Virus record (IMG/VR): IMGVR_UViG_3300034072_000758
Coordinates: 186,001 to 250,000 of that record
Length of the DNA stretch: 64,000 nt
Strand: one strand, 5' to 3'
Positions 8,681 through 62,049 of this stretch are shown here, piece by piece (within the stretch, counting starts at the first letter, position 1; each line of letters starts with the position of its first letter). The notes beneath the pieces were generated by a model. It saw only the letters and a program-made list of their open reading frames with translations. It ran no database searches and was not told the DNA's origin. The position numbers and the translations under genes are program-made.

Positions 8681-9039
8681 AGGAGTTGATGCGCGATTTC
8701 GGTGAGCGGGAGAGTTCCTTCGAACTGGACCTTCTTCCCGGCCTTTGTGTGAGTCACGGTAACGATATTGTCACCCAGACCCTTGAGCAACACGTCGAGA
8801 ATGGTGTTCTCACCATTCTCGACATCGCTCTGGTATGGGCGGACATGGGCTTCACCCACATGAATCATTTCTTGTTCCCATACAAAAAGGAGAAACATAC
8901 GATACGCACCAAGCTTCTGACCGTCCCACTTACGCAGAATAGCGAACTGTACGTCATCTTCATCGAAGACTTCGGTGCTGATCAACGCATAGACCGTATC
9001 GTCCGTCTCGCTGCGTTTATATGCCTGATAGACTTTCAT
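8677..9039 (-). CDS. hypothetical protein
   Basis: Start moved to MKVYQAY (ATGA overlap with the kptA stop). Confidence 0.65.
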   Translation of the reverse strand: MKVYQAYKRSETDDTVYALISTEVFDEDDVQFAILRKWDGQKLGAYRMFLLFVWEQEMIHVGEAHVRPYQSDVENGENTILDVLLKGLGDNIVTVTHTKAGKKVQFEGTLPLTEIAHQLL

Positions 9040-9608
9040 TGGGGCCTCCCGAACAGAAAATACTTTGTCGGTACGGTGTCTGTCAACCAAACACCATTCT
9101 CGGACAAATAAAATTTATACCCATCCTTGGACATGTGGTAGGCGTCCACGATGATGATATGAAGATTGCCGCCTTGACGCTTACCGACTTTCTCCGCCGT
9201 TTCACGATCCTTGGACAGGTGAACGTGCTGACGAGACATCTTGGAGATCGCCCCGGATGCCAGTATCTTACTTAAATTGTCCGTGGACGTTCCGTGGTAA
9301 AGATAGGCCGGGGGTTCTTTCTCTTCAAGCTTGAGATCGACTTCGATGGAATGCCCTTGGTTGGCGCGCACTCGAATACCTTGCTCGACCCGTTCATAAG
9401 CGAACCTTTGCTTATCGTTCGTTTCTATCACAGAAAGAATATCGTTCACCGTGATACTAGTATCGACTTTAGAGCGCACGGCCTTGAGAAGGTCTGACAT
9501 ACTGACCCAACCGTTTTCATCCAAGGTGATGCCACCCGCCGCCGGATCGTGGCGCAGGATCAGTGACATGAACTTGGAGACTTTTGTTTTTTGTTTTTCG
9601 GTCATCAT
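9036..9608 (-). CDS. kptA: RNA 2'-phosphotransferase (KptA/Tpt1)
   Basis: SLILRH, DKQRF, IRANQGHS, LYHGT, RQHVHLS and SENGVWLT signature motifs. Confidence 0.95.
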   Translation of the reverse strand: MMTEKQKTKVSKFMSLILRHDPAAGGITLDENGWVSMSDLLKAVRSKVDTSITVNDILSVIETNDKQRFAYERVEQGIRVRANQGHSIEVDLKLEEKEPPAYLYHGTSTDNLSKILASGAISKMSRQHVHLSKDRETAEKVGKRQGGNLHIIIVDAYHMSKDGYKFYLSENGVWLTDTVPTKYFLFGRPQ

Positions 9609-9612
9609 GGTC

Positions 9613-10164
9613 TTATATTATTACGGTTGGAGTATTGTTGGATAACGAAGCTATAACTTCGTCATTGATTTTGTGGGCGTGGTGGTCGGCATGTTCCTTT
9701 TTACCGAAGCCACAGGCACTAGACAGTCGAATCCATTTATTATTGGTAGTATTCCACTTCCAACAATCATATGAGAAATCCCAATACTTACGATCCAGCA
9801 TAATACCATCAATCGATATGGTATTATACGTTTCTTTGACAGCCGCATATTGAAGTTGTGTAACCACCATCGGCTTAGACGATTTGTGGTGTGTTACAGA
9901 GAAGGGTGGGGGCGCTTCCCAAGCTTCTCCTTGAATGCGGAAATATGGCTTACCCCACGGCGACATACCATTGATCCACTCGCGCGCTTCTTCCACAGTA
10001 TCAAAGACCAAAAGCCCACCTTCGGGTGACTTGTAGAGGTTAGAAACATCAACCCATCGACCGGGAGCGCTCAAGTCAACAATCTCCGTGTAATCCACGT
10101 TGTTAGGAATTGGTTTCCATGAGGGATTGTCAGACGGAAAGTATCTCTCAACGATAACGGTCAT
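9613..10164 (-). CDS. hypothetical protein
   Basis: 183 aa ORF in the operon. Confidence 0.7.
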   Translation of the reverse strand: MTVIVERYFPSDNPSWKPIPNNVDYTEIVDLSAPGRWVDVSNLYKSPEGGLLVFDTVEEAREWINGMSPWGKPYFRIQGEAWEAPPPFSVTHHKSSKPMVVTQLQYAAVKETYNTISIDGIMLDRKYWDFSYDCWKWNTTNNKWIRLSSACGFGKKEHADHHAHKINDEVIASLSNNTPTVII

Positions 10165-10487
10165 TTAATGCTCCTTGGGCCGAACTTAGCACCAATATTG
10201 TCAACATCAGCATCTAGTAAGACCTTCTCACCGGCTTTACTGATCTTATATACAGAAACATGGCGACTACCTTTTCCAGTTCCGAAACGAACCTTCAAAG
10301 GATTTTCTTCGACCATATCTTTATTTTGGAGACGTTTGATAGCCACGACCACTTGAGCAATAGAAACTTTGCGGCCTTCGACTTCGCTGATGATCTTAGC
10401 AATGTTCGCCGCATACGCTTTATCTTCCAGTGTCTTCACCAGAGCCAACGTGGCGCGCTCAAACTTTTGTAGTTTATCACCGAACAA
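10161..10487 (-). CDS. PadR-like winged-helix regulator
   Basis: AYAANIAKII...QVVVAIKRLQNKDMV...VYKISKAGEKVL; paralogue of 10900-11214; TTG start with AGGAG RBS. Confidence 0.7.
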   Translation of the reverse strand: MFGDKLQKFERATLALVKTLEDKAYAANIAKIISEVEGRKVSIAQVVVAIKRLQNKDMVEENPLKVRFGTGKGSRHVSVYKISKAGEKVLLDADVDNIGAKFGPRSIK

Positions 10488-10488
10488 T

Positions 10489-10521
10489 GAAAAAAATGCT
10501 CCTAAACTTTGTTAGGAGCAT
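10489..10521 (-). terminator. intrinsic terminator whose 3' arm carries the downstream RBS
   Basis: Arms 10496-10505/10512-10521 (ATGCTCCTAA/TTAGGAGCAT), then a T tract on the minus strand. Confidence 0.7.
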
Positions 10522-10549
10522 TCTTATATATTAAGTTAGCGGCTGTCAA
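10521..10549 (-). promoter_or_regulatory. sigma70-like early promoter
   Basis: TTGACA 10549-10544, N17, TAAGAA. Confidence 0.55.
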
Positions 10550-10551
10550 CT

Positions 10552-10890
10552 TTAAAAAACCAACATTCCGTTTACAATTTGAACAGGTATGTATGTAAAC
10601 TCGGTGGCATTGACTGGTTTGATAGCAACATCAACCCATAGTTCATTTGCGGCGATCCGCGCAGGAGTGTTGTTTGTTTCGTCACAGACAACTACATAAT
10701 CTTCGGGAGCGGGAAGACCCGCTTCTTTGACAAAAAGATCGATGAACTCACCGGTAACTTTCGTATTGGATGTGTTCATAAAAATCCGAGAAAGAATATC
10801 GAAACGATCCGGCGCAGGAGTAGCGAACGCCACCGAGGGAACAATAGCGGTCAGTGCGGCAGCACCTATAAAGAATTGACGACGTTTCAT
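10552..10890 (-). CDS. twin-arginine-like signal fused to a tail-sheath C-terminal-like fragment
   Basis: N-term MKRRQFFIGAAALTAIVPSVAFA; C-term DYVVVCDETNNTPARIAANELWVDVAIKP resembles the T4-like sheath C-terminus; AGGAG RBS. Confidence 0.75.
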   Translation of the reverse strand: MKRRQFFIGAAALTAIVPSVAFATPAPDRFDILSRIFMNTSNTKVTGEFIDLFVKEAGLPAPEDYVVVCDETNNTPARIAANELWVDVAIKPVNATEFTYIPVQIVNGMLVF

Positions 10891-10899
10891 AACATACTC

Positions 10900-11214
10900 C
10901 TATTTGGTTGCTAATTTATCCGATTGGATAACCAGACCTTGCCACATACGCAGGGTTTCATCGAAGGATTTACCGCCTTCTTTGGTGACCTTGTAGAATT
11001 TCACCGGGCGACGGCGTGTGTCGATCTGATGAAGCATATGATCGGAGGCTATATACCCCTTCTTCACAAGACGCTGGATTACCACGACCACTTGATCCAA
11101 GCCGACTTCGCGTCCAAGGAACTCCGTCATGAGTCGGGTAATCTGCGCAGGATATGCTTCTCCGTCAAGGAGTGTTATGGTACGCATCACCGCGCATTCA
11201 AAATATTGCATCAT
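10900..11214 (-). CDS. PadR-family transcriptional regulator
   Basis: FECAVMRTI..DGEAYPAQI..QVVVVIQRLVKKGYI..KFYKVTKEG; start moved to the ATG after the AGGAG RBS. Confidence 0.8.
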   Translation of the reverse strand: MMQYFECAVMRTITLLDGEAYPAQITRLMTEFLGREVGLDQVVVVIQRLVKKGYIASDHMLHQIDTRRRPVKFYKVTKEGGKSFDETLRMWQGLVIQSDKLATK

Positions 11215-11224
11215 GGGGTGGCTC

Positions 11225-12079
11225 CTATATGGATCGCATGACGGCGACCATAGCCGCGTCGTCATCTTCTGTAGTCTGAACAAACAACCGAGCAAGTATC
11301 GGGTCTGTCACGTAATGGACGTTCTCTCGAATGATAGATTCGTCGTAACCGTACCCGTGCATGGTGCTGTTATTCCAACAAAACAATTCAACCTTTTGTT
11401 CTCTGCTGAGGACATCGGATAAATGACTCATCATATACAGGCTTTGCCAGCCTATTTCCCGACTACCTGCGACTATCCCCGCCTCGAAGCCTACTTTCAA
11501 AGCATCCATGCTGATATTTGTGAAGTAGCGCAGATTTTGGAAAATATGCGGGGCAAGCGCAATTTGCCCTTCTTCACCGAGTAAATCTTCATACTTCCTG
11601 ATAGTCGGCTCGATGAATTGCTTCTGATAATCCAACATACCCCGAATAGCGAAAATAACCTGATCCCTTGTTGGGTTCTTCACCATCAGAATATAAGAAG
11701 CACTACGCCGCAAATATTCATCATTGACAGCCTCGGTCGGATTTTTAATAAAGGCGTAGCTCTCGGCTTTCTTCTTGACCGCACGAAGCTGTAAATCTTC
11801 CGGCTGATCCTTCATATACCGAATAGCATCCACATCATTGGAAAACGCTGTGCGCTTAACCTGATCGGACGGATTATTGATGTGAGCCAGCATCAACCCA
11901 TTGATGCGGACCAGAGCCAGTCGAATTTTTTCCGCCATAGGCGTGTCGTTATGAAGATCGGCCCAGATTGACCAAATCATTGCGTTAAGGTGATTATCCC
12001 CATACTTATGGATGGGATAGTTGACCTTGAGAATATCCGCTGACATCTTCCTAAGTTCTTCGGTATTAAACATCAACAA
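11225..12079 (-). CDS. helical repeat protein (DUF4116-like I-x-N-P-S/T repeats) with CT-motif tail
   Basis: HINNPSDQV, DQPEDLQLRAV, FIKNPTEAV; ends DDDAAMVAVMRSI. Confidence 0.75.
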   Translation of the reverse strand: MLMFNTEELRKMSADILKVNYPIHKYGDNHLNAMIWSIWADLHNDTPMAEKIRLALVRINGLMLAHINNPSDQVKRTAFSNDVDAIRYMKDQPEDLQLRAVKKKAESYAFIKNPTEAVNDEYLRRSASYILMVKNPTRDQVIFAIRGMLDYQKQFIEPTIRKYEDLLGEEGQIALAPHIFQNLRYFTNISMDALKVGFEAGIVAGSREIGWQSLYMMSHLSDVLSREQKVELFCWNNSTMHGYGYDESIIRENVHYVTDPILARLFVQTTEDDDAAMVAVMRSI

Positions 12080-12951
12080 TTCCTCAGTACAGCAACAAGG
12101 GCTTCGTCCGATTGCGACAGGCCCGCGAATAATTTTGTCAGAGTGACATCCCGAATATAATCCGAGTTTTCGATCAGAATATTCGAGTCATAACCGAAGC
12201 CGAACATGGAGCGATCATATATCTTGAAAAGGTCTACCTTTTGCTCATATGTCAGCTTCGGGGAAACATGCTTGAGATATTCAAAGAACTCTCGCAGATG
12301 AACATAGCTTTCATTCTCGTGAGTTACATGGCGGACATATCGCGTATACGCCAGCGTTAGATCGAACGGCGGATCAACCAGCTTGTCGAAATACCGATAC
12401 CATCTGTTCATGTTCGCCACGAACATCCAAGTCGGAATCAAATGACCAAAGTGCGTAAAGAACCAATCAGTATTTTGGCTGAAACGCTCAATTGCAAGTT
12501 CGATTAATTCCGGCTGAGGATCATCGATGTCCGCCAGATTCTTATAATAGTTTTGTACATGGGCGATCTTCACATCTTCGGACGGATTTATGAAATATCG
12601 ATATAGACCGCGCTTGCGTTGTCTCAGCAACCACAGTTGCTCGTCTTCGTCCTCAACATTCATATACTTCACCAGCCACGGCGTCTTGCGCATGGCGGCA
12701 CGAACAACCGTGCGGGACGGGTTCTTGATATGAAGAAGATTGAAACCGTTGTCGTTGACCAACTTCATTCGAGCTTTAGTGGCAAGAGCTTTACTTGTTT
12801 GGAGGTCAGCCCAGATCGCCCAAATCACAGGAGCATACGGTGTTATACCCAAGGGCCAACCGCGATCCAGTTCCTCATAGGTGAGGGTTTTGATTTGTTC
12901 GAGCTTATACATTAGACCAATTATAGACAGAAAACCAATATATACAAGCAC
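12073..12951 (-). CDS. helical repeat protein (DUF4116-like), paralogue of 11225-12079
   Basis: Shares IWxIWADL; HIKNPSRTV and FINPSEDV repeats; ends SDEALVAVLRNC. Confidence 0.75.
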   Translation of the reverse strand: MLVYIGFLSIIGLMYKLEQIKTLTYEELDRGWPLGITPYAPVIWAIWADLQTSKALATKARMKLVNDNGFNLLHIKNPSRTVVRAAMRKTPWLVKYMNVEDEDEQLWLLRQRKRGLYRYFINPSEDVKIAHVQNYYKNLADIDDPQPELIELAIERFSQNTDWFFTHFGHLIPTWMFVANMNRWYRYFDKLVDPPFDLTLAYTRYVRHVTHENESYVHLREFFEYLKHVSPKLTYEQKVDLFKIYDRSMFGFGYDSNILIENSDYIRDVTLTKLFAGLSQSDEALVAVLRNC

Positions 12952-61761: not shown

Positions 61762-62049
61762 TTACTCCTTACAAGTGCCGGGAACAGGCTGGGACGTGAT
61801 GCCTTCTCCCCGCACGAAAAGATAGGTCTGGCAACCGTTGGTCTTATCGGTGGAGATAAAGGCGCGGATTGTGAAACCGTCCTCATACTCGCCGATTTGT
61901 GCGATGACGGCTCGATTGCTGACCGGGGTGGATGCCGCTTCGGCGACGGCGACGTTCCCAACACGGGCCGAGTGAACTGGTGCTTCGGCGGGCTTCGAAC
62001 AACCGATTAGACCGATAGCGAGAATGAGTAGTGCGGTGGTACGAAACAT
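61762..62049 (-). CDS. putative lipoprotein, paralogue of 61430-61756
   Basis: LIGC lipobox; TDKTNGCQTY...VPGTCKE. Confidence 0.8.
   Translation of the reverse strand: MFRTTALLILAIGLIGCSKPAEAPVHSARVGNVAVAEAASTPVSNRAVIAQIGEYEDGFTIRAFISTDKTNGCQTYLFVRGEGITSQPVPGTCKE

What the first reader, a model, noticed from the sequence alone, without database searches (positions are those of the whole stretch)
10552..10890. Tat-type signal peptide fused to a tail-sheath C-terminal fragment
Seen: a 112-aa gene with a good RBS, N-terminus MKRRQFFIGAAALTAIVPSVAFA, and C-terminal DYVVVCDETNNTPARIAANELWVDVAIKPVNATEFTYIPV. Established: RRxF(L/F) plus an h-region and AxA is a twin-arginine export signal, and the C-terminal sequence matches the conserved end of T4-like contractile sheath proteins (CDETNNTP..NE..D..I.P). 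Inference: a structural-gene fragment repurposed as an exported periplasmic protein, for example a decoy for structural-protein-sensing defences or a superinfection-exclusion factor.
Basis: partly seen in the sequence, partly recalled or inferred. Interest (0 to 1): 0.68.

Follow-up and report, generated by a model that had tools for sequence, protein, structure and literature searches.

The report
Exported copy of tail-sheath end domain
A 517-kb soil phage has a small extra gene made from the end of its own tail-sheath gene joined to a secretion signal, and another phage lineage has the same design under clear selection, so some phages seem to send a piece of their injection machine into the host cell envelope for a purpose still unknown.

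Summary
Window 10552..10890 (minus strand) encodes a 112-aa protein with a K-R-R-Q-F-F signal peptide ending A-F-A, followed by a real homologue of the last ~85 residues of contractile-tail sheaths (phrog_10581 E=1e-18; 53-58% identity to this phage's own 961-aa sheath, which lies 142 kb away). It is not debris. Synonymous sites are saturated while dN/dS is about 0.17, all 14 invariant sheath columns are kept, and the gene has its own ribosome-binding site and terminator. The retained piece is the alpha9/alpha10 plus three-stranded-sheet half of sheath domain I, which is the tube-attachment helix and the handshake acceptor platform, without either donor arm. An exhaustive search of 1.84 billion proteins found no orthologue. 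It did find a second lineage (P0119 and P0159, 139 aa) with a textbook T-R-R-G-F-I-K signal on a complete sheath C-terminal domain. That gene recurs in at least six samples, with dN/dS 0.15 overall and 0.07 over the signal codons. It groups with a different sheath clade, so two origins are favoured but not proven. Export is strongly inferred. The Tat route is plausible but untested. The function, possibly binding of incoming tails in the periplasm, is speculation. The cytoplasmic-decoy idea is unlikely.

The parts
10552..10890 (-). Gene for the 112-aa pre-protein (P0001), stop codon included
   Evidence: the only ORF of this frame; intact
10822..10890 (-). Codons 1-23: predicted cleavable signal peptide (n-region M-K-R-R, 17 uncharged residues, A-F-A, then T-P-A-P)
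   Evidence: read from the sequence; feature scan of all ORFs of the genome; composition
10879..10884 (-). Twin-arginine codons (R3 R4) of the K-R-R-Q-F-F motif
   Evidence: consensus Z-R-R-x-Phi-Phi from PMC13673990
10567..10806 (-). Codons 29-108: sheath-derived part, aligned to residues 866-950 of the phage's own 961-aa sheath
10897..10901 (-). Shine-Dalgarno AGGAG, 6 nt before the ATG; overlaps the TAG stop (10900..10902) of the upstream gene
10492..10525 (-). Intrinsic-terminator-like hairpin (14 pairs) followed by a T-run, directly after the stop
10900..11295 (-). Upstream neighbour on the same strand: PadR-like winged-helix gene (start uncertain), apparently co-transcribed
   Evidence: weak PadR match; paralogue of the downstream neighbour
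10161..10487 (-). Downstream neighbour: second winged-helix gene, 35% identical to the upstream one, lying after the terminator
   Evidence: E=7e-15

Best explanation
P0001 is a working accessory gene of a 517-kb phage. SHOWN: an old duplicate of the last ~85 codons of a sheath gene, most likely the phage's own, now follows a signal peptide. The retained piece is the C-terminal half of sheath domain I: two helices (the alpha9/alpha10 equivalents, alpha10 being the tube-attachment helix) and the three-stranded sheet that accepts the handshake strands of neighbouring subunits. Both strand-donating arms are missing. STRONGLY INFERRED (about 0.8): the protein is exported across the inner membrane and cleaved after A-F-A, giving an 89-aa acidic periplasmic domain. 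INFERRED (about 0.55): export uses the host Tat pathway, which carries folded proteins; the alternative is Sec. SPECULATIVE (about 0.25): in the periplasm the domain uses an inherited binding surface to hold a tail component of an incoming contractile device, such as the tube that contraction has just bared on a related superinfecting phage or a tailocin. It would then either block entry or report it, in the way T4 Spackle and RI act in the periplasm. The overall confidence of 0.4 is for the layered statement as a whole: the paralogue and export layers are much firmer than the function layer.
For: Homology. Own sheath, tube and gp25 genes lie elsewhere, so this copy is extra. Old and selected: nucleotide identity 76/74/45% at codon positions 1/2/3, dN 0.30, dS 1.79; all 14 invariant columns kept. 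Own RBS and terminator. Grouping with the phage's own sheath costs 0.8 lnL, p-AU 0.52, and gave a better likelihood than the free search. Second lineage with the same design: P0119 on 5 separately assembled contigs, orthologue P0159 with the same gene order, dN/dS 0.15 overall and 0.07 over the signal codons. Fold: mature P0119 pLDDT 82, pTM 0.74; the top ~40 PDB hits are sheaths with TM 0.55-0.71, then gp25 initiators. Anatomy of domain I: PMC6088184 and PMC10457771. Signal motif: with PMC13673990. A second RR-signal ORF in the same phage. Precedents for small periplasmic phage proteins that act on superinfecting phages: Spackle, PMC7677548; RI, PMC8385771.
Against: No experiment and no RNA data. 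The gene is a singleton: no orthologue among 1.84 billion representatives, and it is absent from the nearest complete relative. Its own model is only moderate (pLDDT 66), and its fold matches are weak. The attachment-helix equivalent is the most changed part: a 5-residue deletion and net charge -2 against a mean of +1.6 in 35 sheaths. Six nearly invariant, mostly charged sheath positions are replaced. So sheath-like binding of its own tube is doubtful. The Tat HMMs are silent. The signal is short for a Tat signal (23 residues; my own knowledge) and its hydrophobicity is Sec-like. The tube-binding prediction gave no verdict. The host is unknown, so the presence of a Tat system in it is assumed.
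Confidence: 0.4

Rival explanations
1. Same exported protein, but carried by the Sec pathway; the two arginines are just the positive n-region of an ordinary signal peptide.
For: The signal is 23 residues with RR at positions 3-4 and no basic residue in the c-region. H-region mean hydrophobicity is 2.05, within the range of Sec-type signals of this genome, 1.8-2.3. The Tat-signal HMMs give no hit.
Against: K-R-R-Q-F-F fits Z-R-R-x-Phi-Phi. The analogous P0119 has the full T-R-R-G-F-I-K motif, conserved in P0159. The same phage has another RR-signal ORF. The HMMs also miss P0119, so their silence carries no weight.
Confidence: 0.3
2. An exported protein whose job has nothing to do with tails: the sheath fragment was only a handy small stable fold, now binding a host envelope component or a phage lysis protein (for example an antiholin-like regulator).
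For: The helical face that touches the tube in sheaths is the most altered part. The gene sits among regulators and RNA-repair genes, not tail genes. T4 RI shows that small periplasmic phage proteins can regulate lysis (PMC8385771).
Against: The strand core and the N-N-T-P loop, the sheath-specific conserved elements, are kept intact over a saturated synonymous distance. P0119 keeps the whole domain, including the F-E-P-N-D..T-R motif. This suggests the ancestral surfaces still matter.
Confidence: 0.25
3. A cytoplasmic or membrane-tethered modulator of sheath assembly: an acceptor-only platform like the gp25 initiator, or a chain cap, with the N-terminus acting as an uncleaved anchor.
For: The fold resembles gp25-type initiators (TM 0.53-0.55 for P0119; Z 3.6-3.7 for P0001). 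It has the acceptor sheet but no donor arms.
Against: The phage has its own gp25 gene above the Pfam cut-off. The gene lies 142 kb from the tail module. An A-x-A site with a helix-breaking proline predicts cleavage. The signal codons are under purifying selection in the sister design. P0001 gives no PF04965 hit.
Confidence: 0.07
4. A non-functional leftover of a partial duplication that happens to remain open.
For: Singleton with no orthologue. Below the Pfam cut-off. Very long branch in every tree. Modest fold confidence.
Against: Third codon positions are saturated while first and second are about 75% identical. No stop in 112 codons. Well-placed RBS and terminator. All invariant columns kept. 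The same design is selected elsewhere.
Confidence: 0.08
5. One reading: the fragment soaks up host defence sensors that recognise phage structural proteins.
For: It is a piece of a structural protein made separately from the virion gene.
Against: From my own knowledge, the known sensors of phage structural proteins act in the cytoplasm, whereas a conserved export signal removes this protein from there. No defence or anti-defence family matched, but the PADLOC library was not scanned.
Confidence: 0.03

Closest known systems
Contractile tail sheath proteins (T4 gp18 type; Pfam PF17482 Phage_sheath_1C; phrog_10581)
   Same: True homologue of the last ~85 residues. All 14 invariant columns are kept, including the V-V-C-D-E-T-N-N-T-P core. 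Same alpha9/alpha10 plus three-strand arrangement.
   Different: 112 aa instead of 650-1,550. No N-terminal arm, no outer domains, no C-terminal arm. It has a signal peptide. It is encoded far from the tail module. Six nearly invariant positions are changed and the second helix has a deletion.
gp25 / TssE-type sheath initiators (PF04965)
   Same: A small free-standing protein with the sheath C-terminal-domain fold that offers a platform for the arm strands of sheath subunits (PMC10457771; fold hits).
   Different: No sequence match to PF04965. The phage has its own gp25. Initiators are cytoplasmic baseplate parts without signal peptides.
T4 Spackle (gp61.3) and T4 RI
   Same: Small phage-encoded proteins with cleavable signals that act in the periplasm against, or in response to, superinfecting phages. 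Spackle binds a tail-tip component (PMC7677548; PMC8385771).
   Different: No sequence or fold relation. Neither derives from a virion protein. Their function is demonstrated, whereas here it is only proposed.
P0119 / P0159 (uncharacterised metagenomic phage genes found here)
   Same: Same design: a twin-arginine signal directly followed by a sheath C-terminal domain, standalone, in an accessory region.
   Different: 139 aa with the complete Pfam domain (60.6 bits). Only 45% identical to P0001. Closest to a different sheath clade (P0097, 53%). Different junction point and unrelated neighbours.

Membership tests
Tail sheath C-terminal domain (PF17482 / phrog_10581) | Significant sequence homology to the C-terminal domain of sheath proteins | tested here: met
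   phrog_10581 E=1e-18; own sheath E=4e-24; 363 hits in the exhaustive search, and the long ones listed all match at their extreme C-terminus
Tail sheath C-terminal domain (PF17482 / phrog_10581) | Pfam gathering score reached over the whole domain | tested here: not met
   23.6 bits against 26.9; only profile positions 47-103 of 104. P0119 meets it with 60.6 bits over positions 5-103
Functional tail sheath subunit | N- and C-terminal arms that donate strands, plus the outer domains | tested here: not met
   The alignment begins at sheath residue 866 and ends before the terminal tail. The real sheath is a separate 961-aa gene
Tat (twin-arginine) substrates | Z-R-R-x-Phi-Phi motif, then an uncharged h-region and an A-x-A site | tested here: met
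   K-R-R-Q-F-F, 17 uncharged residues, A-F-A; consensus from PMC13673990
Tat (twin-arginine) substrates | Match to the curated Tat-signal profiles (PF10518, TIGR01409) | tested here: inconclusive
   No hit for P0001, but also none for the textbook signal of P0119; P0009 scores 11.3 bits against a cut-off of 22.7
Tat (twin-arginine) substrates | Export depends on TatABC and on the RR pair; the host has a Tat system | not testable with these tools
   The host is unknown. The phage encodes no TatA or TatC
gp25 / TssE sheath initiators (PF04965) | Profile match and a place in the baseplate module | tested here: not met
   No PF04965 hit at E<=10. A separate gp25 gene lies at genome 102721-102912. 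The neighbours are regulators and Tpt1
Periplasmic superinfection-exclusion proteins (Spackle type) | Binds a tail component of the incoming phage and lowers its plating | not testable with these tools
   Only an in-silico pair test with the tube was possible, and it gave no verdict

The most novel reading that the evidence does not exclude
Phages have at least twice independently taken the innermost domain of their own sheath, the part that grips the tube and the neighbouring subunits, and sent it folded into the periplasm by the Tat route. There it recognises the bared tube or tip of an incoming contractile device of its own kind (a superinfecting phage, a tailocin, perhaps a type VI tube) and blocks or reports the attack. 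This would be a new class of envelope-level immunity built from a copy of the phage's own structural protein.
Probability: 0.2. Interest if true: 0.8.

Novelty: new variant of a known kind. Interest (0 to 1): 0.6.

Why it matters
Sheath proteins are treated purely as cytoplasm-assembled virion parts. A secreted stand-alone copy of the sheath's core domain, maintained by selection and apparently arisen more than once, means that domain has a second job in the cell envelope. If that job is recognition of incoming tails, it would add a mechanism of superinfection exclusion or sensing to the few known, such as Spackle, Imm and RI, and it would supply a natural tube-binding module. It would also be a rare predicted phage-encoded Tat substrate. 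The practical lesson for annotation is that short sheath hits in phage genomes are not all fragments.

Tried and rejected
1. Tat-signal HMMs (Pfam, NCBIfam) gave no hit for P0001, but they also miss the textbook signal of P0119, so the test is uninformative.
2. Complex prediction of the phage's tube protein with mature P0001 scored 0.00 with no verdict and an uncertain partner fold. It counts neither for nor against binding.
3. The short hits P0003-P0008 are pieces of full sheath genes on sub-kilobase contigs or on frameshift-ridden polished long-read contigs.
4. P0092 (ModA-like N-terminus plus sheath end) lies on one 918-bp contig next to a bacterial LysR gene and is treated as an assembly chimera. 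P0031 and P0158 are on single contigs under 1 kb and stay unresolved. Neither group was counted.
5. Scans of viral contigs with P0001 and with the upstream winged-helix gene found no relative of the locus.
6. The nearest complete relative (523.8 kb, sheath 51% identical) has one sheath match and none of the neighbourhood.
7. Quick tree searches could not place P0001's long branch. Both constraints, with its own sheath and with P0119, beat the short free search, so I ran a fuller search with an explicit AU test. Two earlier attempts failed on thread count and time.
8. The fold searches with P0001's own model were weak (best sheath E=0.008, Z<=4.0). Fold conclusions rest on the P0119 model.
9. 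Reads: only contigs from the source study, identical sequence, no RNA, no variants.
10. P0009 is not a diverged sheath domain (hhalign probability 0.1%).
11. The ESM Atlas added nothing.
12. The literature searches found no paper linking a Tat signal to a sheath domain.

Full report
OBSERVATION. The reported ORF exists at window 10552..10890 on the minus strand: 112 codons plus TAA. AGGAG lies 6 nt before the ATG and overlaps the TAG stop of the upstream gene, so the two genes are packed as one transcription unit. A 14-pair hairpin with a T-run follows the stop directly on the same strand; the region holds 14 terminator-like sites against 3.6 expected, and this is the strongest. Only table 11 was used throughout.

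IT IS A REAL SHEATH HOMOLOGUE. PHROGs places residues 43-107 on positions 850-911 of the 915-position tail-sheath family phrog_10581 (E=1e-18). Pfam PF17482 matches below its cut-off, on the second half of the domain only (23.6 against 26.9 bits). The PDB sequence search finds T4-type gp18 residues 598-638. tblastn against 50,697 phage records gives 271 hits. Every listed hit that carries a functional annotation is a tail sheath, from RaK2-, PA5oct- and Phosso-type jumbo phages, and none covers 80% of the query.

THE GENOME. The window is bases 186001-250000 of a 516,805-bp virus record with direct terminal repeats, rated complete. Its source is a subsurface metagenome, and identical fragments occur in a soil sample of the same study.
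- The phage's real sheath is a 961-aa gene about 142 kb away, followed at once by the tube gene (phrog_4542, E=9e-60).
- A gp25-type initiator is also present elsewhere (PF04965 above its cut-off). The small gene is therefore an extra copy and not a displaced piece of the tail module.
- It lies between two paralogous PadR-like winged-helix genes (35% identity, E=7e-15), near a Tpt1/KptA RNA 2'-phosphotransferase (E=6e-52).
- The nearest complete relative (523.8 kb, sheath 51% identical) has one sheath match only and none of this neighbourhood.

AGE AND SELECTION. Residues 29-108 align to sheath residues 866-950 with 53% identity (E=4e-24), or 58% over 78 gap-free codons. At those codons nucleotide identity is 76%, 74% and 45% at positions 1, 2 and 3. 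NG86 gives dN=0.30 and dS=1.79, a ratio of about 0.17 with synonymous sites near saturation. The duplication is therefore old, and the protein sequence has been conserved since.
- Against 35 sheath C-termini, the small protein keeps all 14 invariant columns.
- It departs at six nearly invariant positions (F to N, E to T, D to T, R to G, I to T, R to Q).
- It has a 5-residue deletion in the second helix and lacks the sheath's terminal tail.
- Its branch is very long in every tree (2.4-3.5 changes per site).

IS IT UNIQUE? The word-indexed search found no genuine short relative. Its hits are pieces of full sheath genes on short contigs or on frameshifted long-read contigs. The exhaustive search of 1.84 billion representatives gave 363 hits. 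Only the query itself scored below 1e-30, and nearly all hits match only query residues from about 26 to 108.

Reading the 42 short hits showed many chimeras with N-termini of bacterial housekeeping proteins, and one striking exception. P0119 (139 aa) begins M-S-M-T-R-R-G-F-I-K, continues through a hydrophobic stretch to A-I-A, and then runs into a complete sheath C-terminal domain (PF17482 positions 5-103, 60.6 bits).
- The identical protein is a complete ORF on five separately assembled contigs. A 252-aa gene always ends 22 nt upstream, and tRNA genes, a 103-aa gene and a thioredoxin follow.
- An 89%-identical orthologue, P0159, has the same length and gene order in another run.
- Between the two, dN/dS is 0.054/0.365, or 0.15. 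Over the 25 signal codons it is 0.046/0.69.

A gene of exactly this design is therefore under purifying selection, export signal included. A profile search with the standalone forms returned 872 short proteins. P0048 (96 aa, no signal) is a further genuine standalone sheath-domain gene seen in two sources.

ONE ORIGIN OR TWO?
- P0001 and P0119 are 45% identical in the sheath part only.
- P0001 is 58% identical to its own sheath. P0119 is 53% identical to the ~800-aa sheath P0097 and 42% to this phage's sheath.
- P0119 and P0159 group with P0097 and P0105 at 95-97% SH-aLRT support.
- None of P0119's neighbours has a homologue in this genome.
- The junction with the signal differs by about 14 residues.
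- In an explicit test (43 rows, LG+G4), the best tree has lnL -5168.97. P0001 with its own sheath gives -5169.75 (p-AU 0.52). All Tat forms together give -5179.68 (bootstrap proportion 0.047, p-AU 0.115).

Two independent fusions are favoured but not proven.

THE SIGNAL. K-R-R-Q-F-F fits the general Tat motif Z-R-R-x-Phi-Phi, and P0119 fits the stricter S/T-R-R-x-F-L-K (PMC13673990). Seventeen uncharged residues, a proline six positions before the predicted cleavage site, and A-F-A follow. The curated Tat HMMs are silent, but they are silent for P0119 too. Hydrophobicity does not separate P0001 from the Sec-type signals of the same genome. The phage encodes no TatA or TatC. A second ORF of this phage, P0009 (157 aa), has a classic S-R-R-S-L-L-G signal. 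Export is well supported; the route is not settled.

WHAT PIECE OF THE SHEATH IS IT? In sheath proteins only domain I builds the sheath. It consists of the N-terminal helix or arm, helices alpha9 and alpha10, and a C-terminal three-stranded sheet. Alpha10 is the helix that attaches to the tube, and the sheet accepts one strand from the N-terminus and one from the C-terminus of neighbouring subunits (PMC6088184; PMC10457771). The gp25 initiator is a free copy of this platform.
- The model of mature P0001 (pLDDT 66) has two helices and then three strands. It maps, weakly, to CD1363 263-354, pyocin R2 sheath 303-364, KP1 sheath 571-632 and gp25 60-129 (Z 3.3-4.0).
- Mature P0119 models well on its own (pLDDT 82.3, pTM 0.74). 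Its top ~40 PDB matches are all sheaths (TM 0.55-0.71), followed by gp25.

Both proteins are therefore acceptor platform plus attachment helix without the donor arms. In P0001 the attachment-helix equivalent is the most changed element, with net charge -2 against a mean of +1.6 (range -1 to +4) in sheaths. Overall pI is like that of the sheath domain (4.3 against 4.4-4.5).

MECHANISM. Shown: a selected, separately expressed paralogue of the sheath core domain with an export signal. Inferred: it works in the periplasm. After contraction, the only natural ligand of this domain that reaches the periplasm is the bared tube, with its tip, of an incoming contractile device. Small periplasmic phage proteins that act on superinfecting phages are known: Spackle binds the gp5 lysozyme (PMC7677548), and RI is the periplasmic antiholin thought to sense periplasmic DNA from superinfecting phages and so trigger lysis inhibition (PMC8385771). 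I therefore rank tail recognition in the envelope first, at about 0.25. The altered attachment helix and the empty complex prediction (no verdict) leave it open. A cytoplasmic initiator or cap role is made unlikely by the phage's own gp25 and by the conserved signal. A dead relic is made unlikely by the codon pattern.

LIMITS. There is no experimental or expression evidence. The host is unknown. P0001 is a singleton. The independent-origin claim rests on about 100 alignment columns.

Noticed in passing
outside the window: G000:C1:498180-498653 (+) = L094:6181-6651: A second ORF with a twin-arginine signal in the same phage (P0009, 157 aa, S-R-R-S-L-L-G...A-I-A). It matches no known family, gives a weak TAT_signal hit (11.3 bits), and is not sheath-like.
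   Followed up: partly
window 10792-10815 (-) and G000:C1:498282: The motif A-P-D-R-[FY]-D-x-L occurs only twice in the six-frame translation of the 517-kb genome: in P0001 and in P0009, each just after the predicted signal cleavage site (16 of 24 nt identical). The N-terminal module of P0001 may derive from a P0009-like gene. This was noticed post hoc and its significance was not established.
   Followed up: partly
window 10161-10487 (-) and 10900-11295 (-): The small gene sits between two paralogous PadR-like winged-helix genes (35% identity, E=7e-15). The terminator and a promoter-like site (10549->10520) lie between the small gene and the second of them.
   Followed up: partly
window 11225-12079 (-) and 12073-12951 (-): A tandem pair of paralogous genes of unknown function (284 and 292 aa, 28% identity, E=8e-31), overlapping by 7 nt, with no Pfam family.
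   Followed up: partly
window 9036-9608 (-): A Tpt1/KptA-family RNA 2'-phosphotransferase (PF01885, E=6e-52) encoded by the phage.
   Followed up: no
L095:136-555, L096:1200-1619, L103:346-765: P0119 and P0159 carry C-V-V-C where sheaths have only the second cysteine. A thioredoxin gene lies two genes downstream, and tRNA-Arg(CCG) overlaps the 3' end of the gene, with tRNA-Thr and tRNA-Arg(CCT) after it.
   Followed up: no
L101:425-715 and L102:30-320: P0048, a 96-aa standalone sheath C-terminal-domain gene without a signal peptide, in which the conserved cysteine is replaced by valine. It is present in two independent sources, so free-standing sheath-domain genes are a small mixed class.
   Followed up: partly
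proteins P0016, P0017, P0020, P0092, P0094, P0156: Public protein collections hold many short 'proteins' that join the N-terminus of a bacterial housekeeping protein (S1-, ABC ATPase-, ModA-, FtsW- or ClpA-like) to the last 60-100 residues of a phage sheath. They are probably assembly chimeras and a trap when hunting for short sheath-domain genes.
   Followed up: partly
window 61762-62049 (-) and G000:C1:360635-360985 (+): Two small ORFs with lipoprotein-type signals (L-I-G-C and L-T-A-C lipoboxes). They are candidates for a spanin or another envelope function.
   Followed up: no
L104:7106-7900 (-): An endolysin-like gene (phrog_894, E=6e-20) lies just upstream of the sheath gene, on the opposite strand.
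   Followed up: no
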